Shown: positions 32,042 to 54,275 of the stretch, one piece after another
How positions within the stretch are numbered: position 1 is the stretch's first letter
Layout of the letters: the number at the start of each line of letters is the position of its first letter
IMG/VR virus record: IMGVR_UViG_3300032240_001991
Location: 1 to 64,000 of that record
DNA: 64,000 bases
Strand: one strand, 5' to 3'
Translations under genes and position numbers: made by a program
Notes under the pieces: model-generated
Told to the model about the DNA's origin: nothing
Database searches by the model: none
The model's input: only the letters and a program-made list of their open reading frames with translations

Positions 32042-32234
32042 ACCGCAGGATGTCTGTGAATGTTACCAATGCATCTTAGATAATAATTTAACACAAAATG
32101 GATGGCCGCTATATTTGGTCAAATTTATCTTATGTACAGAATGTGGTAATAAACGTTGTCCAAAAGCAACAGATCATAGGCATAAGTGCACCGGAAGTAA
32201 CGAGACCGGCCAACCAGGAAGTCGATTTCAATGA
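32034..32234 (+). CDS. Small Cys-rich protein
   Basis: CECYQC...CTECGNKRCPKATDHRHKC. Confidence 0.55.
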   Translation: MNEPQDVCECYQCILDNNLTQNGWPLYLVKFILCTECGNKRCPKATDHRHKCTGSNETGQPGSRFQ

Positions 32235-32926
32235 TTGATTTAGTAGAACAACCGTTTAATTGCGTACATTGCGGAAAGAGTTTTATGAAAGAAAAAACTC
32301 TTGTGGCTCATATGTGCGAAAATAAAAGACGCGCTTTACAAAAGGATGAAAAGCGTGTTCAGGCTGGATTCATGGCCTACAATCGTTTCTATCAATTAAC
32401 ACAAAATGCTAAAAAAGCTAAGACTTATGACGATTTTTGTAAGAGTTCTTACTATAATGCATTTGTTAAGTTTGGTAGCTTTATTAATAACGTTAATCCA
32501 TTATACCCTGATAAGTTCATTGACTTTGTTATTAAAAGTGGTGTAAAATTGGACCATTGGTGTAGAGACGAACTTTACGAAAAGTATCTTTACGAAACAA
32601 TCAAAGTTGAACCGGTAGAATCTGCTGTGCAAAGAAGTCTGCAAACAATGATGGACTGGGGTGACATCAGTCAAGCACAGTTTAATCATTATTTTAGATA
32701 TGTAAATCATAATCGCGCTGTCCATGATATACTTAATGGAAAAATTAGTCCTTGGTTAATACTTAATACTAAGAGCGGCAAAGATATGGTATCAGGCTTC
32801 AACGACGAGCAGCTAAACTTAATTGCACCAGCATTTGATGTATCATATTGGCTTAAAAAATTTAAAGATCGAGTTGACGATGTTACGCTTGTCAAAGAAA
32901 TCTGTAAAGAAGCAGGCATCAAATGA
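32231..32926 (+). CDS. Hypothetical protein with N-terminal C2H2-like zinc finger
   Basis: CVHCGKSF...LVAHMC. Confidence 0.6.
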   Translation: MIDLVEQPFNCVHCGKSFMKEKTLVAHMCENKRRALQKDEKRVQAGFMAYNRFYQLTQNAKKAKTYDDFCKSSYYNAFVKFGSFINNVNPLYPDKFIDFVIKSGVKLDHWCRDELYEKYLYETIKVEPVESAVQRSLQTMMDWGDISQAQFNHYFRYVNHNRAVHDILNGKISPWLILNTKSGKDMVSGFNDEQLNLIAPAFDVSYWLKKFKDRVDDVTLVKEICKEAGIK

Positions 32927-33519
32927 CTAAAGTAAGTTGTGACGTTGACATTGATTTTGCAAATCGAGATGATATTTTAAATAAATTACAATATATATCA
33001 GCATATCGTGTTGAAAGAGGCGAAGGAAAACGGCATAATACTGGCGTATATATGCACAAAATTCCTTTTAATCCAATAACTAATACCGCAAGCATTGAAT
33101 ACGAAGAAGCAGAAGGCCGCGGTTATTTTAAGTTTGATTTTTTAAATGTTAGCATTTATAAAGACATAAAAAACGAAGAACATTTAATTGAGTTAATGAA
33201 TAAGGAGCCATTATGGGAACTTTTACTTCAAGAGGAATTTGTAAATCTGTTATTTCATTTAAAGGGCCACTCGGCGGTTCTGAAGAAAAATTGCCCCACT
33301 TCAGTGGAACAATTAGCTGCGGTCCTAGCGATGATACGCCCCGCGAAACGTTATCTGATTGGGAAAGATTGGACGACGATTATGAAGGAGATTTGGGAGA
33401 AACCTGAGCATAACGAGTATTACTTTAAACGTGCACACGCTATTAGCTATGCATTTCTTGTAGTAGTGCACATGAACTTATTATGCGAAAATTTTGAAAA
33501 AGTTACTTCAGTCTCTTAA
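32923..33519 (+). CDS. Minimal DnaE (DNA polymerase III alpha)-like palm-domain protein
   Basis: CDVDIDF, RHNTGVY, KFDFLNV, LAMIRPA and FKRAHAISYA match DnaE motifs in order within 198 aa. Confidence 0.75.
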   Translation: MTKVSCDVDIDFANRDDILNKLQYISAYRVERGEGKRHNTGVYMHKIPFNPITNTASIEYEEAEGRGYFKFDFLNVSIYKDIKNEEHLIELMNKEPLWELLLQEEFVNLLFHLKGHSAVLKKNCPTSVEQLAAVLAMIRPAKRYLIGKDWTTIMKEIWEKPEHNEYYFKRAHAISYAFLVVVHMNLLCENFEKVTSVS

Positions 33520-33883
33520 CTGTACGTACTAGCTGAATTGATTTTCTTTTAACTCTTTTTTCAGCTAGTTCACTTAAATTAACAACAGGCCCAAATATTA
33601 ATTTAACATCTTTAGAATTAAATGTTTTGATATAATCTCTAAATAATATCATATCTTTTTTAAGGAAAATATTAATAGGAATTTTTCTATTACTTTCCCA
33701 CCACCAAATATCACCTAACTCTAAGAATTTCTGACGTTCGTCGTCTGATTTAATACAGGAAAAGTCGTAGATACTCGTTACATAGGAATCAAAATTGAGA
33801 ATGATTCCCACGTATTCAACATCGCTTGATTTGATGCATGTTATGAATGGAAAATTCTTTTGAATGTTGTCTTTAGTAGTCAT
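33503..33883 (-). CDS. Hypothetical protein
   Basis: 126-aa ORF convergent with the mini-DnaE gene. Confidence 0.6.
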   Translation of the reverse strand: MTTKDNIQKNFPFITCIKSSDVEYVGIILNFDSYVTSIYDFSCIKSDDERQKFLELGDIWWWESNRKIPINIFLKKDMILFRDYIKTFNSKDVKLIFGPVVNLSELAEKRVKRKSIQLVRTVKRLK

Positions 33884-33905
33884 TAATTATAAAATAAATA
33901 CACAC

Positions 33906-34751
33906 ATGAAATTACCAGTTTATTTATACCCCAATACGTTTGAAATAGTATTGGATTTGGATAACAATAACAGGATTTACCAAGTTATGTATCAAAAAAA
34001 CCTTAAGGTTCAAAAAGGCGTCAAAAATACTATTCAGCTTCAATTTAAAAACAGCGATCAAAAATTTTTAAATGTTTCTTCAAGCACCTTTGTGTTTGTT
34101 TTATTTGATGCAGACGATCAACGAAATTTAATACAAAAACCTGTAACAATTTTAGATGTAGGGTCTACCTCAACAGTTTATCCAACTAAAGGACTAGGAC
34201 AAGTAGTATTAACTGAAAGCGATTTACAGGCCTGTGAAAGCACTTTTTATAAAATTGGCATTAAGGCTTTAGATTCTAGCGGCAGTTTTGTTCCTGCATA
34301 TGCTAATACCTATTACGATGTTGCAGGCACATTAGAAGTAAGACACGATTTATATCCAACACTTTTACCAAGTCAAGATATAACACATTTCCTTCCTTAC
34401 TATAACGCAAATGTTGGTGCACAGCAGTACGAATATTACAGTGGTAATTTAGATGCAGCTCCGCAATTTAAATCGAATGTGGCATTACATACTGTAGCGG
34501 TATACATGACAGATTATAAGGGACATGTCTTAATTGAAGGTACTTTAGAAAACGATCCTGCAACTTTTGGCAACTATGCTCTAATTAGCAATAAATCCTA
34601 TGACGGCTTTAGTGGCATTGATTACACTAATTTTAATGGTATTTTTTCAAAAGTTCGAATTCGTTACATACCTGCTAAAAATCCAGTGACTCAACAAAAC
34701 AACGACACTGCGTATGCAGGAACAGTTGACAGGGCGTTATATAGAAGTTAA
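33906..34751 (+). CDS. Hypothetical (probably structural, late) protein
   Basis: ATAAATA directly upstream of MKLPVYL; beta-rich composition. Confidence 0.6.
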   Translation: MKLPVYLYPNTFEIVLDLDNNNRIYQVMYQKNLKVQKGVKNTIQLQFKNSDQKFLNVSSSTFVFVLFDADDQRNLIQKPVTILDVGSTSTVYPTKGLGQVVLTESDLQACESTFYKIGIKALDSSGSFVPAYANTYYDVAGTLEVRHDLYPTLLPSQDITHFLPYYNANVGAQQYEYYSGNLDAAPQFKSNVALHTVAVYMTDYKGHVLIEGTLENDPATFGNYALISNKSYDGFSGIDYTNFNGIFSKVRIRYIPAKNPVTQQNNDTAYAGTVDRALYRS

Positions 34752-34760
34752 AATTTCTGT

Positions 34761-35756
34761 ATGAACCTTATACAGGGTACCGTACAGTCATTTTTACCTT
34801 CAAGAAGAAAAACAACCTCAGGCGGTTGGATTTCTTTTAATGCTCCCTGTTGTCAACATCGAGGCGAAAATCAGGATAAAAAAAGCCGAGGTGGAATTAT
34901 TTTTGAAAAAGACGGCTTTGTATATAATTGTTTTAATTGCGGTTATAAAGCAGGATGGGTACCTGGTAAAAATCTTTCAAAGAATGCTAAAGAGTTGATG
35001 CGTTGGCTAGGAATGCCAGACACTGAAATTAACAAACTTTCTTTAGAAGCGTTAAAAGAAAAAGATGCTATCCCAGTAGCTAAAAAAGAGCTTGTATTTG
35101 ATTTACAAGACGAAGATCTTCCAGATAATTGCATTAGTGTATCTGAATGGATTGCACATGGATGCGAAGATTCTTACATGCTAGATTGTATTGAGTATAT
35201 AATAAGCAGAGGATTAAGTTTAGACGACTATAATTGGCATTGGTCTCCAGAACTTGGTTATCGAGATAGAATCATTTTACCATTTTATTATCAAAATAGA
35301 ATAGTAGGTTGGACAGGAAGAAAAATTAATGACGGAAAACCTAAGTATTTGACAAAAACTCAGGCAGGCTACGTTTTTAATTTAGACGCACAAGTCTATG
35401 AGAGAAAGTTTGTTGTAGTTGTTGAAGGCCAGTTTGATGCTATTGCCATCGATGGCGTTGCTATTATGCATAATGAACCAAATGAAGTTCAATGTGCAAG
35501 AATTAATGGTCTAGAAAAGGAAGTGATTGTAGTTCCAGACAGAGATCGAGCAGGTGCAAAGTTGTTAAAATCGGCACTTGAACACGGATGGAGTGTAAGT
35601 TTACCTCCGTGGGGAGATCATATTAAAGACGTTGCGGATGCAGTTAAAGAATACGGTAAAATTTATGTATTAGCCGCAATTTTACACTATAGAGAGCACA
35701 ATAGGATAAAAATAGAACTAATGAAAAAGAAGCTGGAGAAATTAAATGTCAAATAA
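34761..35756 (+). CDS. gp61: DNA primase (zinc-binding + TOPRIM)
   Basis: CCQH...CFNCG zinc site; VVEGQFDA and PDRDRAG TOPRIM motifs. Confidence 0.85.
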   Translation: MNLIQGTVQSFLPSRRKTTSGGWISFNAPCCQHRGENQDKKSRGGIIFEKDGFVYNCFNCGYKAGWVPGKNLSKNAKELMRWLGMPDTEINKLSLEALKEKDAIPVAKKELVFDLQDEDLPDNCISVSEWIAHGCEDSYMLDCIEYIISRGLSLDDYNWHWSPELGYRDRIILPFYYQNRIVGWTGRKINDGKPKYLTKTQAGYVFNLDAQVYERKFVVVVEGQFDAIAIDGVAIMHNEPNEVQCARINGLEKEVIVVPDRDRAGAKLLKSALEHGWSVSLPPWGDHIKDVADAVKEYGKIYVLAAILHYREHNRIKIELMKKKLEKLNVK

Positions 35757-37191
35757 AACAGATTACAGTTATGAGATTCAAAAAATCTACTTGGAAATGT
35801 TTTTAAGCGACGCTGAGACATTTATTCGATGCCAAAATATCTTTAATCCTGAGAATTTTGACCAAAAATTACGTAATGCGGCAGAATTCCTGACAACGTA
35901 TGTTGACAAATATAAAGTTATGCCTGAAGCTAATATTGTAAATGCTCAATGTAGAACACAGCTAGAGCCGGTATCAGTAGCTAAAGAAAACTATGTCTGG
36001 TTAATGGACGATTTTGAAAGATTTAGCCGACATAAATCGCTAGAACGTGCAATTATTACTAGCAGCGACCTGCTTGAAGCGGGAGACTATGGCCCTGTTG
36101 AAAAATTAATTAAAGAGGCTATTGCGATTAGTTTACAGAAAGACATGGGCACAGACTACTGGGAAGATCCTCGAGCTCGATTGATGAAATTAAAGGAAAA
36201 TAACGGCCAAATTAGCACTGGATGGCCTAGTGTTGATAAAAAACTATACGGCGGGTTTAAGCGGGGAGAACTTGACATTTGGTGCGCAGGATCAGGTGGT
36301 GGTAAGAGTTTATTCTTGGCTAACCTTGGTGTAAATTTTGCGCTTGCTGGATTAAATGTTATCTATTTTACGTTTGAATTAAGTGAAGAACTTGTGGGTA
36401 TGCGTATTGATAGTATGGTCACGGGCATCTCAACTAGAGAAGTGTTTAAGAATCTAGATGACGTTGAAATGAAGGTTAAGATGATAGGGAAGAAGTCTGG
36501 TAGTATACAGATAAAATACCTTCCTTCTGGCAAAAATTGTAATGATTTGAGGTCATTTTTGAAGGAATATCAGGTCAAAACTGGCAAAAAAGCTGACATT
36601 TTATTAGTGGACTACTTAGACCTTATGTTGCCTCTTAGTATTAAGATTAGTCCTGCTGATCTTTATGTGAAAGACAAATACGTTAGTGAAGAATTGCGTA
36701 ATTTAGCCATGGAAACGCAGACCGTTGTAGTAACTGCAAGTCAGTTAAACCGTTCTGCTGTTGAAGAAATTGAGTTTGACCATAGTCATATTTCAGGCGG
36801 ATTGAGTAAGATTCAAACAGCAGATAATGTCATAGGAATCTTTACAAGTCGCGCGATGAAGGAACGAGGCCGCTATCAAATTCAGTTTATGAAAACACGT
36901 AGTAGTAGCGGTGTTGGACAAAAAGTTGACCTAGAATTTAATGTTGACACACTGAGAATTAACGACCTTGGAGAAGAGGAAGAATCTAGCTTTAATCAGC
37001 AACGAGCCAATTCTTCTACTAGTAATATCGTAAATCAGTTTAAAAAAACCAGCACTATTAAAGAACCTGAACCAGACGAAAATCGTAACGTAGATCCTGC
37101 AGTTGGCGTGCCGGTTGGTAAAGTTAAAGCTACGTCTGATAGCTCTCGTATACGAGCAATGTTGGCTAATCTTAATAGTGAAAAGGATTAA
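35746..37191 (+). CDS. gp41: DnaB-like replicative helicase
   Basis: AGSGGGKS, FTFELSE, LVDYLDL, TASQLNR and QFMKTR. Confidence 0.92.
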   Translation: MSNKTDYSYEIQKIYLEMFLSDAETFIRCQNIFNPENFDQKLRNAAEFLTTYVDKYKVMPEANIVNAQCRTQLEPVSVAKENYVWLMDDFERFSRHKSLERAIITSSDLLEAGDYGPVEKLIKEAIAISLQKDMGTDYWEDPRARLMKLKENNGQISTGWPSVDKKLYGGFKRGELDIWCAGSGGGKSLFLANLGVNFALAGLNVIYFTFELSEELVGMRIDSMVTGISTREVFKNLDDVEMKVKMIGKKSGSIQIKYLPSGKNCNDLRSFLKEYQVKTGKKADILLVDYLDLMLPLSIKISPADLYVKDKYVSEELRNLAMETQTVVVTASQLNRSAVEEIEFDHSHISGGLSKIQTADNVIGIFTSRAMKERGRYQIQFMKTRSSSGVGQKVDLEFNVDTLRINDLGEEEESSFNQQRANSSTSNIVNQFKKTSTIKEPEPDENRNVDPAVGVPVGKVKATSDSSRIRAMLANLNSEKD

Positions 37192-37200
37192 ATATATGAT

Positions 37201-37884
37201 ATGCCAAAGTATACTGCACCAATTGGAATTCACGATACCTTAAATCCTAAAATATGGGACGGAGAAAGCCTCCGTCCTGAAGTTAAGAAATCTCTATTAA
37301 GAATTGCAAAAGAATTTTACAAATTTCTTAAAGTTTCTTCTCCTGTTCAGGATGTATTGTTAACTGGAAGTCAGGCCAATTACAACTATTCAAGAAACTC
37401 TGATATTGATTTGCACTTAGTTTTTGATTTTGAAAATATTGCTTGCGACGAGCCTATAAGCGAGTTGTTTGACACTAAAAGAAAGCTATGGAAAGAAAAA
37501 CATGACATCGACATCTACGGAATCCCTGTAGAAGTCTACGGCGAAGATTCAAATAATCCGTCTGTAAGTTCTGCTTATAGTCTTATTAAAGATGCATGGG
37601 TAAGAAACCCAAGTGATCCTGTAATTTCTTATAATAAAGATCGGGTAGAATACCTAACAGCTTTATGGATTAAGCTTATGGAAATATCCATTGAAAGCAA
37701 AAATCTAAAGATTTGTAATATAGTGCAACAGCTATTAGCAGACTATAGAAAAATGGGTTTGAAGGTCTACGGAGAATTTGGAGTACCAAATTTAGTATAC
37801 AAAAGTTTAAGAAATATTGGTATTATTAAACACATGAGCGATACAATTATTATGCTCACAGATGACGATTTAAGCCTTGACTAA
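37201..37884 (+). CDS. DNA polymerase beta-superfamily nucleotidyltransferase
   Basis: LTGSQANYNY...SDIDLHLV (GS + DxD) and VEVYGED. Confidence 0.75.
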   Translation: MPKYTAPIGIHDTLNPKIWDGESLRPEVKKSLLRIAKEFYKFLKVSSPVQDVLLTGSQANYNYSRNSDIDLHLVFDFENIACDEPISELFDTKRKLWKEKHDIDIYGIPVEVYGEDSNNPSVSSAYSLIKDAWVRNPSDPVISYNKDRVEYLTALWIKLMEISIESKNLKICNIVQQLLADYRKMGLKVYGEFGVPNLVYKSLRNIGIIKHMSDTIIMLTDDDLSLD

Positions 37885-37912
37885 CTGCTATTAAGATTAT
37901 ATATTACAGGTT

Positions 37913-38431
37913 ATGAAACACACAATTTATTTAGATATGGACGGCGTTGTAGCTGACTGGAACGCAGGCGTTCGAGATATTTTAGGTTATACTAAAGAAG
38001 ATCCAAACGCACACTATCCTGACGAAGACTGGAACAGAATCAAAACTAATGAACGCATGTATCGTGACCTTCCGGTTATGAAAAATGCTCAAGATTTGGT
38101 TAATATTGCAAGGCAGTTTCGAGACCGTTTAGGATGGAGATTGCTTTTTCTAACCGCGGTTCCTAAGGGTAATGACGTTCCTTGGGCATTCTGGGATAAG
38201 TGCAATTGGGCACAGAAAAATTTTCCTGATGTACCGGTACACTTTGGACCTTTTGCAAAAGATAAGCAGGTACATGCTGTAGAAGGGGATATCTTAGTTG
38301 ATGATCGTCGTAGCAATGTTGAACAGTGGCGTAGCAAGGGCGGAGTTGGAATCGAGGTCACTGAAGGTGATCTAGGCGCTGCTATTATTAAACTAAGATT
38401 ACTGTTTGATCAGAAGTTATCAGGGCGATAA
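37913..38431 (+). CDS. 5'(3')-deoxyribonucleotidase, HAD family
   Basis: IYLDMDGVVADW, FLTAVP and ILVDDR.SN..QW...GG.GI. Confidence 0.85.
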   Translation: MKHTIYLDMDGVVADWNAGVRDILGYTKEDPNAHYPDEDWNRIKTNERMYRDLPVMKNAQDLVNIARQFRDRLGWRLLFLTAVPKGNDVPWAFWDKCNWAQKNFPDVPVHFGPFAKDKQVHAVEGDILVDDRRSNVEQWRSKGGVGIEVTEGDLGAAIIKLRLLFDQKLSGR

Positions 38432-38625
38432 TCATTCATTTTTTCAATAGTGGCAATTAATTTGTCCTGGTTGGGAAATAAGCTCATTCCTCTATCTCCT
38501 AGGGGACTCTGCCATTTTAAAAACCACACATCGTTAATTTCTGCTACCATAAAAACCCAACCAAATCTATTACCTATAGGACCTAAGGTATAGAACAGTA
38601 TTGGTTTAAAATCATGATCTAACAT
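38410..38625 (-). CDS. Hypothetical protein
   Basis: 71-aa ORF filling the gap between genes. Confidence 0.4.
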   Translation of the reverse strand: MLDHDFKPILFYTLGPIGNRFGWVFMVAEINDVWFLKWQSPLGDRGMSLFPNQDKLIATIEKMNDYRPDNF

Positions 38626-38702
38626 CGCTATGATATTTAGTTTTTTTGGAGTTAGATTAAGGTATAAATTACATAAATAATTAAAATACGAGGTATTTAG
38701 AT

Positions 38703-38918
38703 ATGAGAGCTAAGGACTTTAGCAAAGGTAAAGGATCATCTACTAAACAAGTTAGTACTGCTCCAATTCCAGTTCAAAGGGTTGAAATCCCGTCAGTAGC
38801 AGCAAATCCGTCAAGTAATAATCAGGAACCTATTTTTGGTGTTGATGATAATGATTGGGTTGATGGGTTAAAAGAAACAAATTACTCTGCGTATCTAAAT
38901 TTACGAAACTGGGATTAA
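38703..38918 (+). CDS. Small late protein preceding the AAA gene (same frame)
   Basis: CATAAATA promoter and GAGG SD; MRAKDF N-terminus. Confidence 0.55.
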   Translation: MRAKDFSKGKGSSTKQVSTAPIPVQRVEIPSVAANPSSNNQEPIFGVDDNDWVDGLKETNYSAYLNLRNWD

Positions 38919-38921
38919 AAA

Positions 38922-41486
38922 ATGACTCCAGCTGATCCAACAAATAATCAACAACAGGCTACTCAACAAGCCCAACAACAGGCTCCTCAACAAGCTCCAA
39001 AACTAGCATCACCTGACTTTCAGAGTCAAATAGATTTTATGGCAGGTGTTATCGATAACATGCTATCCGGAGCTAATAAAAGAATTTTAGTTGGAGGAAA
39101 AACTGGTCTAGGTAAAACATCTTTTGTAAAACAGTTTGCTAAAGTTTTTGGATTTCCAACCATTATAGTTGAAATTCCTCATATTGTTGAAGAACAAATG
39201 ATTAACATCCCCTTTGTTATCTTTGATAAAAATGGTCAAAGCTCACAAGGGTACGATCAGGTTAAAATGGAAAAGGAAGGTTCTAGTCCTAAGGTTGAAT
39301 TAGGTAGTTCTTATCTTGCTACAAAATTAGCAAACTTAACAAAACTATCTGATGTTGAATACCGTACAAAAGTTAATAGTTACGACTCAACACTAAAAGA
39401 ATTAATACGTCAATTTGAAGAACAGTATCCTGGAACTATAGCTAAAGTTCGTTCAAAATACGATAAAATTTTATTCTTAGACGAATACTTTAGACAAACA
39501 ACACCCGCCATTAGAAATATTCTTAGAAATATATTAAACGACAGAATTGGTAATGACATTATACCTGCAGGTACATATGTAATGTACGCTTCTAACTTAG
39601 AAGATGTTTCAGGTAGTATTGATCCGCAATCTTCTCACACAACATTCTTTCAGAAAAAGTTTAAGGCTCCAACCAAATCTCAATGGTTATCTTATACTGT
39701 AAGCTCAGCCGTTGGCCAAGGCGTACACATTAAACAAGAAGTAGTAGATGCGTTTGATAAATCTCTTAAAGATGAACACGTTAGCTATGATGATTTAAAT
39801 TTAGAAATAAGAACAAGTCCTAGAAGATGGAGTGACATTTTTATATACATAAACAATGCCTTCCCATTTAAGAGCCCAGATGAGCTAGGAATTTTAAAAA
39901 CAACAATTAAGAAACAATTTCAAAACGATCAAGGAAACACTTCTGATCTATACAATGTAGTAGAAGCATTGCTAGCTAGACTAGCTATTCAATCAAATAT
40001 AGATCCTAAAAAAGTAAAAGAAGTATCCCCCGAGCAGTGGAGAGATGTGTTAGCCCAACAAGTTATGACCGTCATGCAAAGTAAAGGCATGAAGAAATAT
40101 GTTCCAGTCATACAAGGATTGCCCGGTGTAGGTAAGACTGCGATCGGCGGAACTTTTGAGAATCCGCCGTACAACATGAGATTTATTCCAATACTAGCAA
40201 CAACATTGTCTCGTGATAGCGTTGTGGGTATTCCTTTGCCTAAAGAGCAAAATAAACAAATGGGTGTAGAGTTTGCTAAACCAGAATTAGCTATTAAAAT
40301 AGATGACGATATTGAAAGAGCAAATAAGTCCTATTTTAACAGGCTACAGAAAAGAGAAAAAGAAGGCAAGCTAAACGGTAAAACTGCACAAGAAGCTTAT
40401 AGAGATTTTGAAAATCAAGAATACAAATATCTAATTTTTATTGACGAAATTAATCGTGTTAAAGATGTTGCTATCTTTAACAGTTTAAGAAGATTAATAT
40501 TAGAAAAAGAATTCAATGATCAATACAAGCTGCCTAAAGGGGCAGTAGTTGTTGCAGCAATGAATCCGTCGGACCTTGGTACAATTCCAATGACGTCTCA
40601 CTTTAGAGATGCTATTGATCTTATTGACGTTGAACCTAGTTGGAAAGATACAATCAAGTTTATTAAGAACCAAGTTGTTCCTTACCTAAAGAACGAGTAC
40701 AATCCTAGTGACATTGCACTTGATACGTCTTTACAAATTGTTGAAACGTTTCCACAAAACTTCTCTTTAGGAAGAAGACGAACCGCTAAAGAATTTTACA
40801 TTGCAATTGGAGGTTCAGAAGAACTTTACCTAAGTCCTAGAGACTATGACAATATGTTTAAAGTAATTGTCTCTGCAATTGATCGAGTTGCAAACTCACT
40901 TAAAGAGCAAATTAAACGTGGTAAAACTTTCTCACAAGACGAAGTTAACAATCGTATTATTCGTGCAGCAGCTGAAGTAATTGAAAGTACATTTGACGAT
41001 TTATTTTATAAGGCAGGAATGGGAACGCCACCGGGTTGGGATGACCGAGTTCTTAATTTCTTAAATAAGATCGTTGATGTTTCATTACAAATGAAATCAA
41101 CTAAAGCAGGACTAGGATCTTTATTAGACGATGTTATTGCAGGAACAACACAACTAAAAGACGACATAGATTTTGACAACTACATGGCAGATTATATGCC
41201 GGCAAAGTTCCAAAAGGACTTTGACGAATATCTGCACAATATGATCAAAACTACAGAGAACATTCAAGATGTTGTTGACAGTTTAAAAATAATTATAACT
41301 CAATTTGGAACAGCAATTAGAGAAAATCAATTAAATCCTGATGTGTTAAATCGTATAGAAAATACGATACATGTAAACTTTAATGAAGTTCTAAAATCAA
41401 CCGAAGGTAGTGAACAAGAAGACGCTGCTAGATATCTAGCTAAGAATTATAGCGATCTATTAGATATGCTAGGCGTAGATGCGTAA
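38922..41486 (+). CDS. Tandem-domain MoxR/dynein-related AAA+ ATPase
   Basis: Two modules: GGKTGLGKT/LFLDEY/ASN/SPRRW and GLPGVGKT/IFIDEINR/AAMNP/SPRDY. Confidence 0.85.
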   Translation: MTPADPTNNQQQATQQAQQQAPQQAPKLASPDFQSQIDFMAGVIDNMLSGANKRILVGGKTGLGKTSFVKQFAKVFGFPTIIVEIPHIVEEQMINIPFVIFDKNGQSSQGYDQVKMEKEGSSPKVELGSSYLATKLANLTKLSDVEYRTKVNSYDSTLKELIRQFEEQYPGTIAKVRSKYDKILFLDEYFRQTTPAIRNILRNILNDRIGNDIIPAGTYVMYASNLEDVSGSIDPQSSHTTFFQKKFKAPTKSQWLSYTVSSAVGQGVHIKQEVVDAFDKSLKDEHVSYDDLNLEIRTSPRRWSDIFIYINNAFPFKSPDELGILKTTIKKQFQNDQGNTSDLYNVVEALLARLAIQSNIDPKKVKEVSPEQWRDVLAQQVMTVMQSKGMKKYVPVIQGLPGVGKTAIGGTFENPPYNMRFIPILATTLSRDSVVGIPLPKEQNKQMGVEFAKPELAIKIDDDIERANKSYFNRLQKREKEGKLNGKTAQEAYRDFENQEYKYLIFIDEINRVKDVAIFNSLRRLILEKEFNDQYKLPKGAVVVAAMNPSDLGTIPMTSHFRDAIDLIDVEPSWKDTIKFIKNQVVPYLKNEYNPSDIALDTSLQIVETFPQNFSLGRRRTAKEFYIAIGGSEELYLSPRDYDNMFKVIVSAIDRVANSLKEQIKRGKTFSQDEVNNRIIRAAAEVIESTFDDLFYKAGMGTPPGWDDRVLNFLNKIVDVSLQMKSTKAGLGSLLDDVIAGTTQLKDDIDFDNYMADYMPAKFQKDFDEYLHNMIKTTENIQDVVDSLKIIITQFGTAIRENQLNPDVLNRIENTIHVNFNEVLKSTEGSEQEDAARYLAKNYSDLLDMLGVDA

Positions 41487-41495
41487 GGGCACAGT

Positions 41496-42596
41496 ATGAG
41501 ATTTTTTGAATTTAGACCTGTTATAAATGAAATCCTTTCTAAGAAGGGTGTTGAAAAAGGCAAAGTTGCCTTTAAACGGTCTGACATCTCCGATGCTTAT
41601 ATTGCAAAAGTAATACAACAAGTGTCTACAGAGACTGGTGTACCTTATAATGATCTTATCAACGAAATGACTGCTGATATTGAAAAATTTAAAGAGGTTG
41701 GTAAGTACAGCCCCTTGCTATACGATACAATTATTCAAAACTATGCAGAAAATTCAGCATTTAAATTAATTTGGAAATCAAAGCATCCGGTAAAAAAAGA
41801 AAATTATAAATTAGATGTTGGTGTGTTTAAAGAGCTTTTACGTCTAGTTCAGATGGACCATGAATCTTTTTTTCCTTTAAGAGCGCCCGACGGTTTACAA
41901 ATAATAAACAGAATATCTCCAATTTTAGTTCCGTCTCAGAGACAAGAATATGTAAAGGCAGGGTTCAATACCATTGAAACTGCGGCCGTAACAAATACCG
42001 GCGAATTCATTTTTAATGTACCGTTTTTAGAAAGTTTGCTATATTACGGAACTGCCGTGGATGTAAAGCCACAAGGTAAGAAATATGTAGACAATGGCGG
42101 TACTATTCCTAATAATTATTGCTATATTGAATTTATTATAGTACATGAAATATTACACTGGGCATATGGAGATTTCTTTGCCGGTAACAGATTTAAGCAG
42201 TATTCAGGCAGAGCACACAACATTGCTAGCGATTTAAGATCAAATTATCTTTTAGTAAAGAACGGTTACGAGCAACTGCCGCTAGGCCTATTCAGCGATG
42301 ATTTAAACTTTGATAGACCAGAAACTAATTCTTATCAAAAATTAATTGCTGTAGTTGACAGAGAACTGAAGAAAATGCCAAAGCAGTTGCAAGCATGGAT
42401 TGAAGAAACCACAGGCGGAGATGTGCATCCTCCGGGTGATCCATGGAAACCAAAACCTGGAGAAATCTGCCTTAATAATAAAACAGGCGGGTTTGTGATG
42501 ATTACTAAAGACAACGGCGACGGCACATACGAATCAAACGATTTGACAAAAGAGCAAGTAGAAGCTATCCTTGGAAAAACTGTTAATGTGGGTTAA
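41496..42596 (+). CDS. HExxH metallopeptidase-like protein (DUF2201 N-terminal type)
   Basis: TAAVT....FIFN..F, IIVHEILH and HNIASDLRSN. Confidence 0.7.
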   Translation: MRFFEFRPVINEILSKKGVEKGKVAFKRSDISDAYIAKVIQQVSTETGVPYNDLINEMTADIEKFKEVGKYSPLLYDTIIQNYAENSAFKLIWKSKHPVKKENYKLDVGVFKELLRLVQMDHESFFPLRAPDGLQIINRISPILVPSQRQEYVKAGFNTIETAAVTNTGEFIFNVPFLESLLYYGTAVDVKPQGKKYVDNGGTIPNNYCYIEFIIVHEILHWAYGDFFAGNRFKQYSGRAHNIASDLRSNYLLVKNGYEQLPLGLFSDDLNFDRPETNSYQKLIAVVDRELKKMPKQLQAWIEETTGGDVHPPGDPWKPKPGEICLNNKTGGFVMITKDNGDGTYESNDLTKEQVEAILGKTVNVG

Positions 42597-42602
42597 TTTA
42601 AT

Positions 42603-43808
42603 ATGAGAGTTTCAATTAACGATTTATCACCAATTCAATCAAAAGGCGACGGACCGGGCGGCGACGAAGGCGAAGGTGATCAACCAGGCGGCGATCAACC
42701 AGGCGGCGGCGAAGGCGAAGGTGATCAACCAGGCGGCGATCAACCCGGAAAAGGTAAGGGAAAAGGCAAAGGTAAGGGAGAAGGGCCCGGCGAAGGAGAA
42801 GGCGAGGGAGAAGGCGAGGGAGAAGGGCCCGGCGAAGGAGAAGGAGAAGGAGAAGGCGAAGGCGAGGGCAAGGGTAAAGGAAAGGGCAACGGTACCGGTA
42901 ATTCAGGCGGCGGTGATGACGGCGGTGACGGTGATTGGTTAAATCCTAACAAGGGCGGTGGATCCGGAACAGCAAAAACACCAGAAGAGCAAGATATAGA
43001 AAACAAGTTATCTAAACGGGGCGATAACAATGTTGAAGACTTAAAAAAGCGGCAAGGAGAGCAACAGAAAGCTACTCCTCAAGGTAGTCCACAAAGTGGA
43101 AATCAACAAATAACTAGAACTGACGTTGATATCCGTCCAAAGTTTAGTTGGAGAGATTTAGTACGCCAATTTGTGGCAAATTCTAAACCTCCTGAGACTA
43201 CTTATACTCGCCCTTCAAATAGAGCTGCTACGCAGGTTAGTATTGCTCAGCAGACTGGTGCGGCAGCTATTAAACCTGGTGAAAGACCAGGTGAAGAAAT
43301 TTACAAGTTAGCCTTTGTTTTTGATACTTCGGGTAGCATGTACGGAGCTATAGGTCCAGCACTAGCGGAAACAAGAAATTTATTAAAACAACAAAAAGCA
43401 TCTACAGAATCAACATTAGGAATATGCTTTTTTGCAAGTAGATATCTATTAATAGAAGCTAACTTAATGTCTAATAAAGCATGGAAAGTTGCTTCTTTTA
43501 AGAATATGGGAAAACCAGTACCAGAAACAGCAAAGAAATCTCTTGACGATGTTCTTAGAAGCAGCGATACTGGAGGAACCTACTTTGGACCTGAGTTAGC
43601 ATCAGAACTAGCATCAATTGCTTCAACAGGATTCAATGTTATAATCTTCTCAGACAGCGATATGCTAGACAGCAAAAACTGGAATAATTTCTTAAGTCTT
43701 TATCAACGTTACAAACGACAGGTATTTTTTATTGCTCCCGATTTAAATACGTATAAACAAATAGTTAAAAAATTAGGTATACAACCTAACACCTTTGGAC
43801 ACATGTAA
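42603..43808 (+). CDS. Gly/Glu-rich linker + vWA (MIDAS) domain protein
   Basis: GEGE/GKGK low complexity, then VFDTSGSM (DxSxS), TGGT and IFSDSD. Confidence 0.85.
   Translation: MRVSINDLSPIQSKGDGPGGDEGEGDQPGGDQPGGGEGEGDQPGGDQPGKGKGKGKGKGEGPGEGEGEGEGEGEGPGEGEGEGEGEGEGKGKGKGNGTGNSGGGDDGGDGDWLNPNKGGGSGTAKTPEEQDIENKLSKRGDNNVEDLKKRQGEQQKATPQGSPQSGNQQITRTDVDIRPKFSWRDLVRQFVANSKPPETTYTRPSNRAATQVSIAQQTGAAAIKPGERPGEEIYKLAFVFDTSGSMYGAIGPALAETRNLLKQQKASTESTLGICFFASRYLLIEANLMSNKAWKVASFKNMGKPVPETAKKSLDDVLRSSDTGGTYFGPELASELASIASTGFNVIIFSDSDMLDSKNWNNFLSLYQRYKRQVFFIAPDLNTYKQIVKKLGIQPNTFGHM
42648..42925 (+). repeat. Coding low-complexity repeats (GEGE / GDQPGG / GKGK)
   Basis: Repeated units such as GGCGAAGGTGATCAACCAGGCGGCGATCAACC and GAAGGCGAG. 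Confidence 0.85.
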
Positions 43809-43809
43809 T

Positions 43810-44517
43810 ATGAAACTTAAACAAATTATAAAAGAAAATGAAGATACTTCTTTAATCAAGAAATACTTTGATGAGAGTGGGTTTAGCAAAATAGAAGTTA
43901 CGCCTGACGGGGTTAATGTTGAGGGAGATCTTATATTTCGTAGCGAGACATTACAGGTTGAAGAATTACCAGTAAAATTAAATATTGTAACTGGCAACGT
44001 CGACCTTATGGGGTCAGGAATTAAAACATTAAAAAATATTCCTAACTCTTGTAATTCATTAAATGTAAGTTATAATGGATTAACTTCATTGGCAACTGAT
44101 ACTCCATTAGTCGTTAATTCGTTAGCCGCTGACGGCACAAACATAACAGATTTATCAGGAATAAAACTTAATGGTTTACAATATCTAACTTTAGAATACT
44201 GCGAACAATTAAGAACTCTCAAAGGTCTCGAAGGAGTTGCTGTTAAGGAATTAACACTAAAAGGATGTCCTCTTTTTGAAGACGATCTTAGCAGATATAA
44301 TATTGATATAGTAGATATAGAACTTGCTGATTGTAAAAATATGCCCTTAGTTTTCCTTGTAGCATTTGGAAAACCTCATATTAAAGAAGTAGGACGGGAT
44401 ACCAGTCCTCTAATAAAAATTGCTAAAAAATATTTAGATAAAGGTCCGTCGGTCGTACTTGATCTCGTTAGAGAATTGAGAGACCAAGGATTTAAAAACT
44501 CAGCTAAAGTCCTTTAA
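43810..44517 (+). CDS. Leucine-rich-repeat protein
   Basis: LKNIP...LNVSYNGLTSL, LTLEYCEQLRTLKGL and LTLKGCP; start MKLKQIIKE. Confidence 0.65.
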   Translation: MKLKQIIKENEDTSLIKKYFDESGFSKIEVTPDGVNVEGDLIFRSETLQVEELPVKLNIVTGNVDLMGSGIKTLKNIPNSCNSLNVSYNGLTSLATDTPLVVNSLAADGTNITDLSGIKLNGLQYLTLEYCEQLRTLKGLEGVAVKELTLKGCPLFEDDLSRYNIDIVDIELADCKNMPLVFLVAFGKPHIKEVGRDTSPLIKIAKKYLDKGPSVVLDLVRELRDQGFKNSAKVL

Positions 44518-44527
44518 AAGGCTAATA

Positions 44528-45574
44528 TTACCTATTAGCCTTTGCTTCTAATTGAGTTCTAACTGCTTTTAAAAGAGGAGATAGAACTTTACTTGACCCT
44601 TTAGCAGCTAATCTAGCTGCTACAAGCTCATCTGAAGATTTATCGCCTGTTTCTTGTCGATATTGATCAACGTCAGCTTTAACTGCATTTAAAAATTCGT
44701 CGCTAGTTACAGCTTGTTCAACTGCTTCAAACCAGCTAGCACTATACTGATCTGGTTGCTGTTCCCAATTTTTAATTATAAGATTGTTTTTATCGCCAGC
44801 ACGGATACGGCGTATTTTGACTTGTTTTAACACCTTATCTTTAATTCTGCCTAATCTCGCTGATATACGATTTATTGCTGAGTGTATATCATCCTTGTCT
44901 TTCATGGCAGCACGGACGTCAATTTTTCTTCTTTGCACACTAGCTTTGGTTGGCATATCACCGCTACGACGACCCATTAGCTGTGAAGCTGGTAGTTTTT
45001 CAACTTCTTCTGGATCACGCTCCATTAGTCTATAAACACTGATTGGCTTTTCGCCAATAAAATGTTTGAGCTGATCTGCAATTGTTGCTTTAGTAACTTC
45101 TTTCTTTTCTTTCTTATTATAAGCACCACCGCGTGTGCCTACAATTTCTTTTTCTTGGATACCCTGACCATCTTTCAAACTGAATATACCTGTATATTTG
45201 ATAGTTCTGTCTTTAGCTGGATTATAACCTGGCATTTGTAGCATGCGTTGCAAATACTCTTCTTGAGGCTTAAATGCAGCCCAACCATTTGGTCCTTTTA
45301 GGATCATGAAGTTATCATAATGTCCCTTAAACGTTTCTAGGTCTAAATTTCCTGTAGGGTGTGTAAATGGCACTAATACAGCTTGATCACTAACCTTGTA
45401 TGTTTTATGTAGATACTTGGCTAATCTAACACCTTGCTCATCTCGTCCAAAGGTATTGATTAACGGACTAGCTTCAAACATCAATTCAAGCTCTTCCATT
45501 AGCTCCTGGTCAAACTGAGCATCTTCTTCTATTAGATCTAAGCGATCGCGCATTTCTTGTATTATATTCTTCAT
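44528..45574 (-). CDS. Hypothetical late protein (putative head-packaged)
   Basis: TATAAATA at 45603-10 (minus); N-terminus MKNIIQEMRDRLDLIEE. Confidence 0.6.
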   Translation of the reverse strand: MKNIIQEMRDRLDLIEEDAQFDQELMEELELMFEASPLINTFGRDEQGVRLAKYLHKTYKVSDQAVLVPFTHPTGNLDLETFKGHYDNFMILKGPNGWAAFKPQEEYLQRMLQMPGYNPAKDRTIKYTGIFSLKDGQGIQEKEIVGTRGGAYNKKEKKEVTKATIADQLKHFIGEKPISVYRLMERDPEEVEKLPASQLMGRRSGDMPTKASVQRRKIDVRAAMKDKDDIHSAINRISARLGRIKDKVLKQVKIRRIRAGDKNNLIIKNWEQQPDQYSASWFEAVEQAVTSDEFLNAVKADVDQYRQETGDKSSDELVAARLAAKGSSKVLSPLLKAVRTQLEAKANR

Positions 45575-51981: not shown

Positions 51982-52215
51982 TTAGGCTGCGTGCTCTATA
52001 GCGGGCAGCGGAAACTCCTTACGCTGATAGTACTCTACCAGCTGCCGCATGATAACAGCGATCTGCTCGCCTTCTTCGCTAACAGTGAAGCGCACGGGAC
52101 TGTGGCGCCAGCTGTTGGTACGCATGAACTCTGTAAACAATCGACGGTGGCGGTTGTTGTTGACATCAAAGTGTGTGATGGGACGCACGGTGCGTGCTGT
52201 AGCAATGTTACGCAT
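51982..52215 (-). CDS. Small early hypothetical protein (paralog of 61612..61821)
   Basis: RP...FD..N..HRR.FT.FMRT..W.H.PVRF shared; own promoter. Confidence 0.65.
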   Translation of the reverse strand: MRNIATARTVRPITHFDVNNNRHRRLFTEFMRTNSWRHSPVRFTVSEEGEQIAVIMRQLVEYYQRKEFPLPAIEHAA

Positions 52216-52250
52216 AGTAGTTGTCCTGGGTTGTTATGTTAACGACTACA

Positions 52251-52279
52251 GTTATACAGTCTAGCCGCTGAGTCCGCAA
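52251..52279 (-). promoter_or_regulatory. sigma70-like early promoter
   Basis: TTGCGG-17-TATAAC. Confidence 0.55.
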
Positions 52280-52435
52280 TGGGTTTATGGGGTGGGCCCC
52301 ATAAAAAAATAACGGTTGCAGACCTGCTGATGAGATGCTAGCGGTGCCCCAGACGCCTACGGGAGGACGCGGGCTTAACACCGTGCGGGCAGGGTTGCAA
52401 GCAATATTTTTTTACGCAAGTGTAAAAAAATATAG

Positions 52436-52464
52436 TTGCACAAGCACTAGCATGGCGCTACTAT
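52436..52464 (+). promoter_or_regulatory. sigma70-like early promoter
   Basis: TTGCAC-17-TACTAT. Confidence 0.55.
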
Positions 52465-52505
52465 TAACGGGCTGCAATGTAGCAGCGCACTAGTAGTACA
52501 AGCAT

Positions 52506-52820: not shown

Positions 52821-52837
52821 CTGCTACTGCACTGCAC

Positions 52838-54246: not shown

Positions 54247-54275
54247 AAACACATACAAGGACATAGGAGCCCACA

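What the first reader, a model, noticed from the sequence alone, without database searches (positions are those of the whole stretch)
38703..43808. Double-AAA / metallopeptidase / acidic linker / vWA operon written in a single reading frame
Seen: ORFs 38703, 38922, 41496 and 42603 are all in the same frame, separated only by single TAA codons plus 3, 9 and 6 nt (TAA AAA ATG; TAA GGG CAC AGT ATG; TAA TTT AAT ATG). Three same-frame junctions have a 1/27 chance if random. Read through, they would give ~1700 aa: AAA-AAA, HExxH domain, G/E/D-rich linker, MIDAS vWA. That order recalls midasin/Rea1 (AAA ring, linker, acidic region, MIDAS). Known: MoxR ATPases work with vWA partners, and DUF2201-type peptidase and vWA domains are usually one polypeptide, whereas here they are split. 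The AAA gene has two complete modules. Inference: a late-expressed, possibly virion-carried remodelling/proteolysis machine, derived by fission of a polyprotein or subject to readthrough.
Basis: partly seen in the sequence, partly recalled or inferred. Interest (0 to 1): 0.7.

Follow-up and report, generated by a model that had tools for sequence, protein, structure and literature searches.

The report
Jumbo-phage MoxR chaperone operon, split partner
Four neighbouring genes of a giant bacteriophage encode a MoxR-type ATPase machine whose peptidase/vWA helper protein has been split into two genes; the fact that all four genes share one reading frame is coincidence, not a sign of a read-through polyprotein.

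Summary
The four ORFs and their TAA+3/+9/+6 nt junctions are exactly as described. The shared frame is chance. A crude gene call on the same 326-kb phage genome gives six such runs of four co-frame genes. TAA is its commonest stop codon. In eight or nine related loci the same junctions sit in other frames, overlap, or have a different gene order.

The genes form a jumbo-phage MoxR AAA+ / metallopeptidase–vWA module, a pairing already noted by Iyer et al. 2021. The 854-aa ATPase is an internal duplication with two intact AAA modules. They are predicted to lie side by side, as neighbouring modules do in dynein and Rea1. ORFs 41496 and 42603 are the two halves of a DUF2201-type protein that is one chain in about 70% of relatives, for example Ralstonia phage RsoM2USA gp85. 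The break lies in a repeat-rich disordered linker. It is inherited across the window's whole clade and has arisen repeatedly elsewhere.

The 71-aa first ORF is a conserved fourth component with a C-terminal NP..Y...N-W-D tail.

Fission is supported for the peptidase/vWA pair only. Read-through is not supported. Virion association is plausible from proteomics on homologues. This is a new variant of a known kind.

The parts
38703..38918 (+). Small protein (71 aa) with a variable N-terminal part and a conserved C-terminal tail (…NxxxYxxLxNWD-COOH). It is a conserved first gene of the module.
   Evidence: A small ORF ending just before the AAA gene is present in about 20 related loci and shares the C-terminal motif [RK][IL]K.xNPxx[YF]x.[IL]xN[WLFY][DE]-end. 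BLAST hits in L028-L030. GAGG lies 9-12 nt upstream of the ATG.
38922..41486 (+). Tandem-duplicated MoxR-type (AAA_5) ATPase, 854 aa. Module 1 is about aa 30-370, module 2 about aa 373-725, followed by a C-terminal helical domain.
   Evidence: Pfam AAA_5 48.4 bits (cut-off 22) and phrog_1297 ATPase. More than 100 homologue clusters of 840-950 aa. The two halves align to each other, E 7e-6. AF2 model pLDDT 84, pTM 0.70. Best PDB matches are two adjacent ring modules of dynein (Z 14-15) and Rea1 (Z 13).
39096..39119 (+). Walker A of AAA module 1 (G59-T66).
   Evidence: G59, G62 and K65 are invariant in 25 homologues.
39468..39485 (+). Walker B of AAA module 1 (I183-E188; D187 and E188 invariant).
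40116..40139 (+). Walker A of AAA module 2 (G399-T406).
   Evidence: P401, G402, G404 and K405 are invariant.
40431..40448 (+). Walker B of AAA module 2 (L504-E509; D508 and E509 invariant).
41496..42596 (+). N-terminal half of a split DUF2201-type protein. It has a helical extension (aa 1-100), a zincin metallopeptidase core (aa ~105-300), a Pro-rich spacer and an SH3/Tudor-like barrel (aa 314-364).
   Evidence: Aligns to residues 12-310 of fused RsoM2USA gp85. The profile aligns to the peptidase core of the canonical DUF2201 protein of phage PA5oct (hhalign 88.7%). AF2 pLDDT 91. Fold hits are to 'putative metallopeptidase domain' AFDB clusters (prob 0.95-1.0), and to minimal zincins and SH3-like barrels.
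42144..42158 (+). HExxH zinc site (H217 E218 I L H221). D226, D246 and N250 downstream are also invariant.
   Evidence: Invariant columns in 74 homologues.
42603..43808 (+). C-terminal half of the split protein. It has a low-complexity G/E/D/P/K linker (aa ~15-128), a conserved pre-vWA segment (aa ~170-235) and a vWA domain with MIDAS (aa ~236-401).
   Evidence: Aligns to residues 325-610 of fused RsoM2USA gp85. The profile aligns to PA5oct DUF2201 protein residues 209-364 (hhalign 97.8%, E 1e-12).
42653..42889 (+). DNA tandem repeats (45-nt x2, 42-nt x2, GGCGAA x14, GGCAAG x5) that encode the acidic/glycine linker.
   Evidence: Tandem Repeats Finder. Independent contigs break here.
43323..43337 (+). 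MIDAS DxSxS (D241 T S243 G S245). The remaining MIDAS residues are T326 (43578-43580) and D351 (43653-43655).
   Evidence: All five positions are invariant in 56 homologues.
43810..44517 (+). Leucine-rich-repeat-like protein (235 aa), probably the last gene of the operon. It is often, but not always, linked to the module.
   Evidence: Weak Pfam LRR hits. Homologues lie directly downstream in L005, L007 and L028-L030, upstream in L012, and nearby in L021.
44517..44543 (+). 11-bp-stem hairpin between convergent genes, a probable operon end.
   Evidence: Terminator-like scan. This is a consensus match only.

Best explanation
This is one operon of separately translated genes. It encodes a jumbo-phage MoxR-type AAA+ chaperone with its metallopeptidase/vWA cochaperone.

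The components are:
- The ATPase (38922-41486) is an internally duplicated MoxR module. Both nucleotide sites are intact. The two modules are predicted to sit side by side like ring neighbours in dynein or midasin. By inference, three chains would close a six-module ring.
- The cochaperone is a divergent DUF2201-type protein: a zincin peptidase, a disordered linker and a MIDAS vWA. It is one chain in most relatives.
- In the window's clade a stop and a restart arose in the repeat-rich, indel-prone linker. The result is two genes, 41496-42596 and 42603-43808. They most likely still work together, because the segment Pfam counts as the end of the peptidase domain now travels with the vWA half.
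- A conserved small protein (38703-38918) with an acidic aromatic C-terminus is a fourth component.

The shared reading frame is coincidental. Short gaps and Shine-Dalgarno-like sequences point to ordinary coupled initiation, not read-through.

The function is inferred, not shown. The proposal is ATP-driven remodelling plus proteolytic processing of a protein assembly, most likely during virion assembly or maturation or as a particle-associated machine. The vWA MIDAS would grip an acidic residue of the client.
For: Identity of the proteins:
- Pfam AAA_5 for P0002.
- Walker A/B, sensor-1 Asn and SPR motifs are invariant in both modules.
- The two halves are homologous to each other.
- Dynein and Rea1 are the best structural matches with in-plane geometry (Z 13-15). 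Stacked double-ring ATPases fit poorly, with rmsd 13-14 A and TMq 0.17-0.19.

Fission:
- RsoM2USA gp85 covers both ORFs.
- Fused homologues reach the Pfam DUF2201_N cut-off.
- hhalign to the canonical PA5oct DUF2201 protein succeeds for both halves, with P0004 carrying residues 209-262 of that domain.
- 105 of the top 150 representatives are fused and about 34 are peptidase-only.
- The window sits in a clade of 11 split-only clusters (SH-aLRT 98), nested among fused forms. At least 11 state changes are forced by well-supported branches.
- The split state was verified at DNA level in L005, L007, L018, L025, L028, L029, L030 and the P0010 contig.

No read-through:
- Frames and gaps differ at every junction among relatives. 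Only the window has all three in frame.
- There are 6 co-frame quartets in this genome, and TAA is the stop of 266 of 394 genes.
- The stops are confirmed in an independent contig.

Function:
- Iyer et al. 2021 describe a MoxR plus metallopeptidase-vWA pair in group 2.2 jumbo phages and propose virion assembly.
- ATV p618 (MoxR) is a major virion component that binds the vWA protein p892.
- RsoM2USA ORF86 (96.44 kDa, the AAA-AAA homologue) was assigned to a band of purified virions.
- The single-module MoxR ATPase CDS of PA5oct (371 aa, only distantly related to P0002) carries the particle MS note.
Against: - No experiment exists on this protein family.
- The virion assignments are band-level or bulk MS. 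Large AAA+ complexes can co-purify with particles.
- The operon lies after replication genes, not in a structural block.
- The module diverges much faster than its flanks. In L025 and L005 the AAA is 36-38% identical while DnaB is 76-81%. That would also fit a host-interaction role.
- Physical association of the two halves was not shown. The complex prediction gave no verdict.
- The ring stoichiometry is inferred from a monomer model with pTM 0.70.
- P0003 and P0004 themselves do not reach Pfam thresholds for DUF2201_N or DUF2201.
- Some 'peptidase-only' representatives elsewhere in the tree may be truncated gene calls rather than true fissions.
Confidence: 0.8

Rival explanations
1. Programmed stop-codon read-through or a polyprotein. 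The four ORFs would be translated, at least sometimes, as one midasin-like chain, which would explain the shared frame.
For: All three junctions are in frame with short spacers. The peptidase-to-vWA junction is also in frame in the two closest relatives, L028 and the P0010 contig. The domain order resembles midasin.
Against: - TAA is the commonest genuine stop here, and it is generally regarded as the least leaky stop codon (from general knowledge, not tested here).
- Frames differ in L029, L030, L007, L018 and L025. Many junctions overlap by 1 or 4 nt, and the order is reversed in L023.
- The AAA-to-peptidase junction is in frame in only about 4 of 19 loci.
- Six co-frame quartets occur by chance in this genome.
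- No homologue longer than 897 aa contains the peptidase.
- Each ORF has its own start codon and a purine-rich upstream element.
Confidence: 0.03
2. The split is damage. Either a sequencing or assembly error, or a recent pseudogenising nonsense mutation, hit a normally fused gene.
For: The fused form is the majority state. The break lies next to a repeat array where short-read assemblies break.
Against: - The same two-gene layout, with intact full-length ORFs, is found in at least eight independent assemblies down to 36% AAA identity.
- Catalytic HExxH and MIDAS residues are conserved in both halves across the split clade.
- An independent contig reproduces the junction exactly.
Confidence: 0.03
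3. The machine is the same but the job is different. It would be a host-directed or conflict module (takeover, anti-defence, or processing of a signalling or toxic peptide) rather than a virion-assembly chaperone. In one version, the small NWD-tailed protein is a precursor cleaved by the zincin.
For: - The module, from the small ORF to the LRR-like gene, diverges far faster than the adjacent replication genes.
- An LRR-like partner is variably linked to it.
- Kaur et al. 2020 describe zincin peptidases next to MoxR-vWA systems that cleave small, fast-evolving precursors with conserved C-terminal peptides. The small ORF here has exactly that pattern of a variable body and a conserved tail.
Against: - No PADLOC defence-family match.
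- Particle proteomics on homologues point to virions.
- The Iyer et al. proposal and the ATV precedent favour assembly.
- The peptide analogy comes from bacterial systems with different partners.
Confidence: 0.3

Closest known systems
MoxR AAA+ / metallopeptidase-vWA pair of group 2.2 jumbo phages (Iyer, Anantharaman, Krishnan, Burroughs, Aravind 2021, Viruses 13:63); concrete example PA5oct ATPase (371 aa) + DUF2201_N-DUF2201 protein (394 aa)
   Same: A MoxR-clade ATPase is encoded with a protein that joins a zincin HExxH peptidase to a MIDAS vWA. Both occur in jumbo myoviruses. The profile-level homology of both halves to the PA5oct protein is shown.
   Different: - Here the ATPase is a tandem duplicate (854 aa against 371).
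- The cochaperone has an extra N-terminal helical region, a long disordered linker and an SH3-like barrel, and it is split into two genes.
- A conserved small NWD-tailed protein precedes the ATPase.
- Sequence similarity to the PA5oct pair is marginal.
Ralstonia phage RsoM2USA gp87-gp86-gp85 (MG752970)
   Same: It is the only isolate in the phage collection with this family. It has a small ORF ending in NWD, an 840-aa tandem-AAA ATPase (33% identity) and a peptidase-linker-vWA protein.
   Different: The peptidase and vWA are one 610-aa chain. The AAA and peptidase genes overlap by 4 nt and so lie in different frames. The downstream neighbour is a TilS-like gene, not the LRR-like gene.
Midasin/Rea1 and dynein (dynein-midasin branch of the MoxR clade)
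   Same: AAA_5-type modules are concatenated in one chain and predicted to lie side by side in one ring. An acidic or low-complexity stretch precedes a MIDAS domain.
   Different: There are two modules, not six. There is no linker or tail domain of the midasin type. The MIDAS is on a separate polypeptide that also carries, or pairs with, a peptidase. No sequence-level orthology was detected.
Acidianus two-tailed virus p618 (MoxR) / p892 (vWA)
   Same: It is a virus-encoded MoxR-vWA pair. The ATPase is a virion component and binds the vWA protein.
   Different: It is an archaeal virus with a single AAA module, no peptidase domain, and no detectable close homology to this family.
Other MoxR-vWA pairs such as RavA-ViaA (named); CbbQ-CbbO, NorQ-NorD and BchI-BchD are recalled from general knowledge, not from a tool result
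   Same: The general logic is a MoxR-clade ring plus a vWA adaptor. In BchD an acidic/proline-rich linker precedes the vWA.
   Different: These are cellular enzyme-maturation systems with single-module ATPases and no zincin domain.

Membership tests
MoxR-clade AAA+ ATPase (Pfam AAA_5) | AAA_5 profile match above the curated cut-off | tested here: met
   48.4 bits against a cut-off of 22, with two stretches. JGI names homologues 'MoxR-like ATPase'.
MoxR-clade AAA+ ATPase (Pfam AAA_5) | Intact Walker A, Walker B, sensor-1 and sensor-2 (SPR) motifs, here in both modules | tested here: met
   Invariant residues in 25 homologues. Module 1: G59, G62, K65, D187, E188, N225, S299, P300, R301. Module 2: G402, G404, K405, D508, E509, N548, R640.
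MoxR-clade AAA+ ATPase (Pfam AAA_5) | Helix-2 insert typical of the clade | not tested
   This was not examined residue by residue. Structural matches to dynein and Rea1 are consistent with it.
MoxR-clade AAA+ ATPase (Pfam AAA_5) | Genomic coupling to a vWA protein | tested here: met
   A vWA-bearing gene is adjacent in every locus with enough sequence.
DUF2201_N putative metallopeptidase (PF13203) | Profile match above the gathering score | tested here: inconclusive
   P0003 alone has no hit at E<=1. Fused homologues score 23.5-48 bits against a cut-off of 23.2. hhalign of the family profile to a canonical member gives 88.7%, E 2.6e-6. AFDB fold hits to this family have prob 0.95-1.0 but TM<0.6.
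DUF2201_N putative metallopeptidase (PF13203) | Conserved HExxH zinc-binding motif | tested here: met
   H217, E218 and H221 are invariant in 74 sequences.
DUF2201 VWA-like domain (PF09967) / vWA | Profile match above the gathering score | tested here: inconclusive
   P0004 scores VWA_4 17.9 bits (cut-off 27) and VWA_2 13.7 bits. hhalign to the canonical PA5oct DUF2201 protein gives 97.8%, E 1.2e-12.
DUF2201 VWA-like domain (PF09967) / vWA | MIDAS motif DxSxS…T…D | tested here: met
   D241, S243, S245, T326 and D351 are invariant in 56 sequences.
DUF2201-type protein | Peptidase and vWA in one polypeptide | tested here: not met
   Two ORFs are separated by TAA plus 6 nt in the window. The split is conserved in its clade.
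Midasin/Rea1 | Six concatenated AAA modules forming the ring in one chain | tested here: not met
   Only two modules are present.
Midasin/Rea1 | Linker, D/E-rich region and MIDAS in the same polypeptide as the ring | tested here: not met
   These are separate genes in all loci, and no homologue exceeds 897 aa on the peptidase side.
Programmed stop-codon read-through unit | In-frame arrangement and read-through context conserved among relatives | tested here: not met
   Frames, gaps and overlaps vary.
Programmed stop-codon read-through unit | Detection of the extended product | not testable with these tools
   No RNA or proteome data are available. Only DNA runs hold the sequence.
Known anti-phage defence or counter-defence families (PADLOC) | Profile match | tested here: not met
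   Only noise-level hits.

The most novel reading that the evidence does not exclude
This may be a virus-specific, dynein/midasin-like 'half-way' motor. Three tandem-AAA chains would form an asymmetric six-module ring that works with a two-piece peptidase/MIDAS cochaperone. The conserved C-terminal …N-W-D carboxylate of the small upstream protein would be either the MIDAS ligand or a peptide released by the zincin. The whole machine would be packaged in the particle and act at or after ejection.
Probability: 0.15. Interest if true: 0.7.

Novelty: new variant of a known kind. Interest (0 to 1): 0.4.

Why it matters
MoxR-vWA chaperones are widespread but poorly understood, and their role in jumbo phages rests on one comparative-genomics proposal.

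This family adds three testable features:
- a duplicated MoxR module that may be a simple model for how concatenated rings such as dynein and midasin arose;
- a natural fused-versus-split series of the peptidase/vWA partner, which marks the disordered linker as dispensable for covalent continuity;
- a conserved small protein that may be the client or ligand.

One cultivable phage, RsoM2USA, carries the fused version, and its ATPase was reported in virion preparations, so the questions can be addressed experimentally.

The co-frame observation carries a warning. Runs of same-frame genes are common in compact phage genomes and should not be read as polyproteins.

Tried and rejected
- Megablast of the region against 50,697 phage records gave no match.
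- The search for related loci with the single protein found no relatives. An alignment was needed.
- One close relative (the P0010 contig) gave gene coordinates but no DNA.
- Complex prediction of P0003 with P0004 residues 165-401 gave no verdict. The chains were folded without alignments at pLDDT ~59. This is not evidence for or against binding.
It was re-run without that row.
- Sequence search of PDB with both family profiles found only generic P-loop hits, or nothing.
- Foldseek against PDB for the peptidase model found nothing significant. VIA-align gave only weak (Z 5-5.6) but thematically consistent zincin hits.
- PADLOC gave no defence family.
- BLASTP of the small proteins of the window and RsoM2USA found no alignment. 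The shared C-terminal motif emerged only from the multi-locus alignment.
- The supplement of Iyer et al. is not held, so the phage carrying ASV44729.1 could not be confirmed.
- An alternative genetic code was considered and rejected. All three stop codons terminate normal-length genes, and TAA is the commonest.
- A stacked double-ring (p97/ClpA-like) architecture was considered and judged less likely from the model geometry.

Full report
**1. Observation**

The window is the first 64 kb of a 326,658-bp IMG/VR virus record. It carries T4-like myovirus genes:
- tail sheath, 13524-16889;
- large terminase, 22007-23596;
- gp32-like SSB and UvsX;
- primase and DnaB helicase.

ORFs 38703-38918, 38922-41486, 41496-42596 and 42603-43808 are all in one frame. 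They are joined by TAA AAA ATG, TAA GGG CAC AGT ATG and TAA TTT AAT ATG. A contig from an independent assembly of the probable source run covers 38600-42694 without a single difference. The stops are therefore real.

**2. Is the shared frame meaningful? No.**

I made a crude non-overlapping gene call on the whole genome, giving 394 genes at 93% coding.
- 27% of 334 same-strand neighbour pairs share a frame.
- There are six runs of four co-frame genes, close to the roughly six expected.
- One of them is an unrelated run in this same window, 21647-26416, which includes the terminase and SSB genes.
- TAA ends 266 of the 394 genes, so it is an ordinary stop here.

The decisive test is comparative. 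I collected 25 IMG/VR loci with an alignment-based scan, four closer contigs by exact protein look-up, and the one isolate that has the family, Ralstonia phage RsoM2USA.

| Junction | Window | Relatives |
|---|---|---|
| small ORF → AAA | +3 nt | +7, +1, +2, +47 nt |
| AAA → peptidase | +9 nt | -4, -1, +3, +1, -4 nt and others; in frame in about 4 of 19 loci |
| peptidase → vWA | +6 nt | +3, +3, +1, +1, -1, -4 nt |

Only the window has all three junctions in frame. In L023 the peptidase-vWA gene lies upstream of the small ORF and the ATPase. Each window ORF has its own ATG preceded by a purine-rich element. The tight spacing is what translationally coupled phage genes normally show.

**3. What the genes are**

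*The ATPase, P0002 (854 aa).* It matches Pfam AAA_5, the dynein-related MoxR-type domain, at 48 bits, and phrog_1297.
- More than 100 homologue clusters of about 840-950 aa exist. Nearly all are metagenomic and many sit on 200-440-kb contigs.
- In an alignment of 25 of them, both modules keep Walker A (G59/G62/K65 and G402/G404/K405), Walker B (D187-E188 and D508-E509), a sensor-1 Asn (N225, N548) and an S-P-R motif (R301, R640).
- The two halves align to each other across the unusual helical insert between Walker A and B (E 7e-6). The gene is therefore an internal duplication.
- An AlphaFold2 model (pLDDT 84, pTM 0.70) places the modules side by side.
- Its best PDB matches are two adjacent ring modules of dynein (about 500 residues, rmsd ~5.5 A, Z 14-15) and of Rea1/midasin (Z 13).
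- Stacked double-ring ATPases superpose badly. ClpA, ClpC and Hsp104 give rmsd 13-14 A, and p97 gives TMq 0.17-0.19.
- In the ESM Atlas only one large, purely viral cluster shares the whole tandem architecture.
- A trimer closing a six-module ring is my inference, not a result.

*The peptidase and vWA ORFs, P0003 and P0004.* Together they are homologous to single proteins elsewhere.
- RsoM2USA gp85 (610 aa) aligns to P0003 residues 10-311 (37% identity, E 1e-65) and to P0004 residues 129-401 (33%, E 2e-42).
- phrog_1314 hits both ORFs at successive profile positions.
- An exhaustive HMMER search with P0003 against 1.84 billion representatives found only 188 relatives. Of the best 150, 105 carry the vWA in the same chain (455-897 aa), about 34 are peptidase-only proteins of 320-470 aa, and the rest are fragments.
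- Fused members reach the Pfam gathering score for DUF2201_N.
- The family profiles align to the canonical DUF2201_N-DUF2201 protein of phage PA5oct. The peptidase core aligns to residues 40-106 (88.7%). The P0004 profile aligns to residues 209-364 (97.8%, E 1e-12).
- The second alignment shows that the conserved segment just before the vWA (P0004 residues ~170-235, W..L....TY.+P.RR...KPGE) corresponds to the C-terminal part of what Pfam models as the peptidase domain. The break therefore lies inside that model, in a long variable insert.
- Catalytic residues are invariant on both sides: H217, E218, H221, D226, D246 and N250 in P0003, and the full MIDAS D241, S243, S245, T326 and D351 in P0004.
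- The P0003 model is confident (pLDDT 91). It has an N-terminal helical extension and a zincin core. The core matches AlphaFold DB 'putative metallopeptidase' clusters (prob 0.95-1.0) and, weakly, minimal zincins such as selecase (Z 5.6). It ends in an SH3/Tudor-like barrel at residues 314-364.

*The linker.* The first ~128 residues of P0004 are G/E/D/P/K low complexity. They are encoded by DNA tandem repeats: 45-nt and 42-nt duplications and a GGCGAA x14 array. Relatives have Pro/Gly/acidic linkers of different sequence. In L025 the region is cut twice, leaving a separate 121-aa ORF with poly-Pro and another small barrel. A repeat-rich, disordered, indel-prone linker is where a frameshift or nonsense change followed by re-initiation would do least harm. 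That explains why fission recurs.

*Phylogeny of the split.* On a tree of the peptidase domain (142 rows), the window lies in a well-supported clade (SH-aLRT 98) of 11 split-only clusters nested among fused forms. Well-supported branches force at least 11 changes of state over the tree. Some isolated short representatives may be truncated calls. I verified the two-gene state at DNA level in L005/L006, L007, L018, L025, L028, L029 and L030, and from gene coordinates in the P0010 contig. No protein joins the ATPase to the peptidase. The longest peptidase homologue is 897 aa. Fission of a polyprotein therefore applies only to the peptidase/vWA pair.

*The small ORF.* P0001 is not filler. A small ORF ends just before the ATPase gene in about 20 loci. 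Its body is variable, but it shares a C-terminal motif, roughly [RK][IL]K.xNPxx[YF]x.[IL]xN[WLFY][DE]-COOH, including RsoM2USA gp87.

*The downstream gene.* The LRR-like gene 43810-44517 is often linked. It is downstream in L005, L007 and L028-L030, and upstream in L012. A strong hairpin at 44517-44543 probably ends the operon.

**4. How it probably works**

Shown:
- the domain identities and conserved catalytic residues;
- the fused and split states;
- the lack of frame conservation.

From established knowledge: MoxR-clade ATPases act with vWA cochaperones whose MIDAS binds an acidic residue of a client (summarised in Kaur et al. 2020).

From the literature:
- Iyer et al. 2021 already reported a MoxR plus metallopeptidase-vWA pair in group 2.2 jumbo phages. 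They proposed a role in virion assembly with proteolytic processing.
- In the archaeal virus ATV, the MoxR p618 is a major virion component that binds the vWA protein p892.
- In RsoM2USA, ORF86 (96.44 kDa, the tandem-AAA homologue) was assigned to one of ten bands from purified virions.

Inferred: a ring of three tandem-AAA chains engages the MIDAS protein. That protein brings a client, and the zincin half, to be remodelled and cut. The two halves reassemble non-covalently.

A competing reading is a host-directed or peptide-processing role. It is kept alive by two observations. The module diverges much faster than the neighbouring replication genes (AAA 36-38% against DnaB 76-81% in L005/L025). 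The small ORF also resembles the fast-evolving precursors with conserved C-terminal peptides that zincins process next to bacterial MoxR-vWA systems.

**5. Comparison and novelty**

The system belongs with the jumbo-phage MoxR/DUF2201 pairs. It is a divergent branch. tblastn finds it in only one of 50,697 phage records. It differs from the PA5oct-type pair in four ways:
- the duplicated ATPase;
- the expanded cochaperone;
- the conserved small protein;
- in this clade, the split.

It is not a midasin. It has two modules, not six, and the MIDAS is on another chain. The resemblance in ring geometry and in the acidic stretch before the MIDAS is real but limited.

**6. Verdict**

- Read-through is rejected.
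- Fission is confirmed for one gene pair.
- The virion link is plausible.
- The system is a new variant of a known kind, of moderate interest.

Noticed in passing
window 21647-26416: A second run of four co-frame genes in the same window. It includes the large terminase (22007-23596), a virion protein and a gp32-like SSB. These functions are plainly unrelated, so it serves as a useful internal control.
   Followed up: yes
window 52000-64000: G+C jumps from about 35-40% to about 49%. The region holds mostly tightly packed small ORFs (60-100 aa) and a tRNA-Lys(UUU) at 60487-60562 on the minus strand. Its composition and gene size differ from the rest of the window. No Rfam family other than the tRNA was found.
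   Followed up: partly
L025:9739-10104: In this relative the peptidase/vWA region is cut into three genes. A 121-aa ORF with a poly-proline stretch and a second SH3-like barrel sits between the halves, overlapping each neighbour by 4 nt.
   Followed up: partly
L023:3270-8526: The gene order is reversed. The fused peptidase-vWA gene precedes the small ORF and the tandem-AAA gene.
   Followed up: no
window 32231-45574 versus L005, L025, L029, L030: The module (small ORF, ATPase, peptidase, vWA, LRR-like gene and the convergent gene 44528-45574) is far more diverged than the syntenic replication genes just upstream. In L025, for example, DnaB is 81% identical while the ATPase is 38% and the vWA 32%.
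   Followed up: partly
L032 (Pseudomonas phage PA5oct, NC_071039.1 238080-239264) and related records: A canonical DUF2201_N + DUF2201 (peptidase + vWA) protein is annotated as 'HNH endonuclease', 'homing endonuclease', 'DNA repair ATPase' or 'Zn-dependent hydrolase' in different PA5oct-like records. phrog_1314 carries the HNH label. This is probably a propagated mis-annotation.
   Followed up: partly
protein P0108: One tandem-AAA homologue is 1332 aa and carries a LAGLIDADG-type domain (PF14528). This suggests an intein or homing endonuclease inserted in the ATPase.
   Followed up: no
G000 (whole record): CheckV rates this 326-kb linear contig as only 36% complete. That is odd for a T4-like jumbo phage whose relatives assemble at 240-440 kb.
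   Followed up: no
window 42787-42901: Independent short-read contigs break or are masked at the GGCGAA/GGCAAG repeat array. The exact repeat number in the acidic linker may therefore be uncertain.
   Followed up: partly
window 37201-37884: A nucleotidyltransferase-fold protein (NTP_transf_2 / Pol-beta-like, phrog_36119) sits between the DnaB helicase and the NT5C-like deoxynucleotidase. It is present in L028 and L029 but absent from other syntenic relatives.
   Followed up: no
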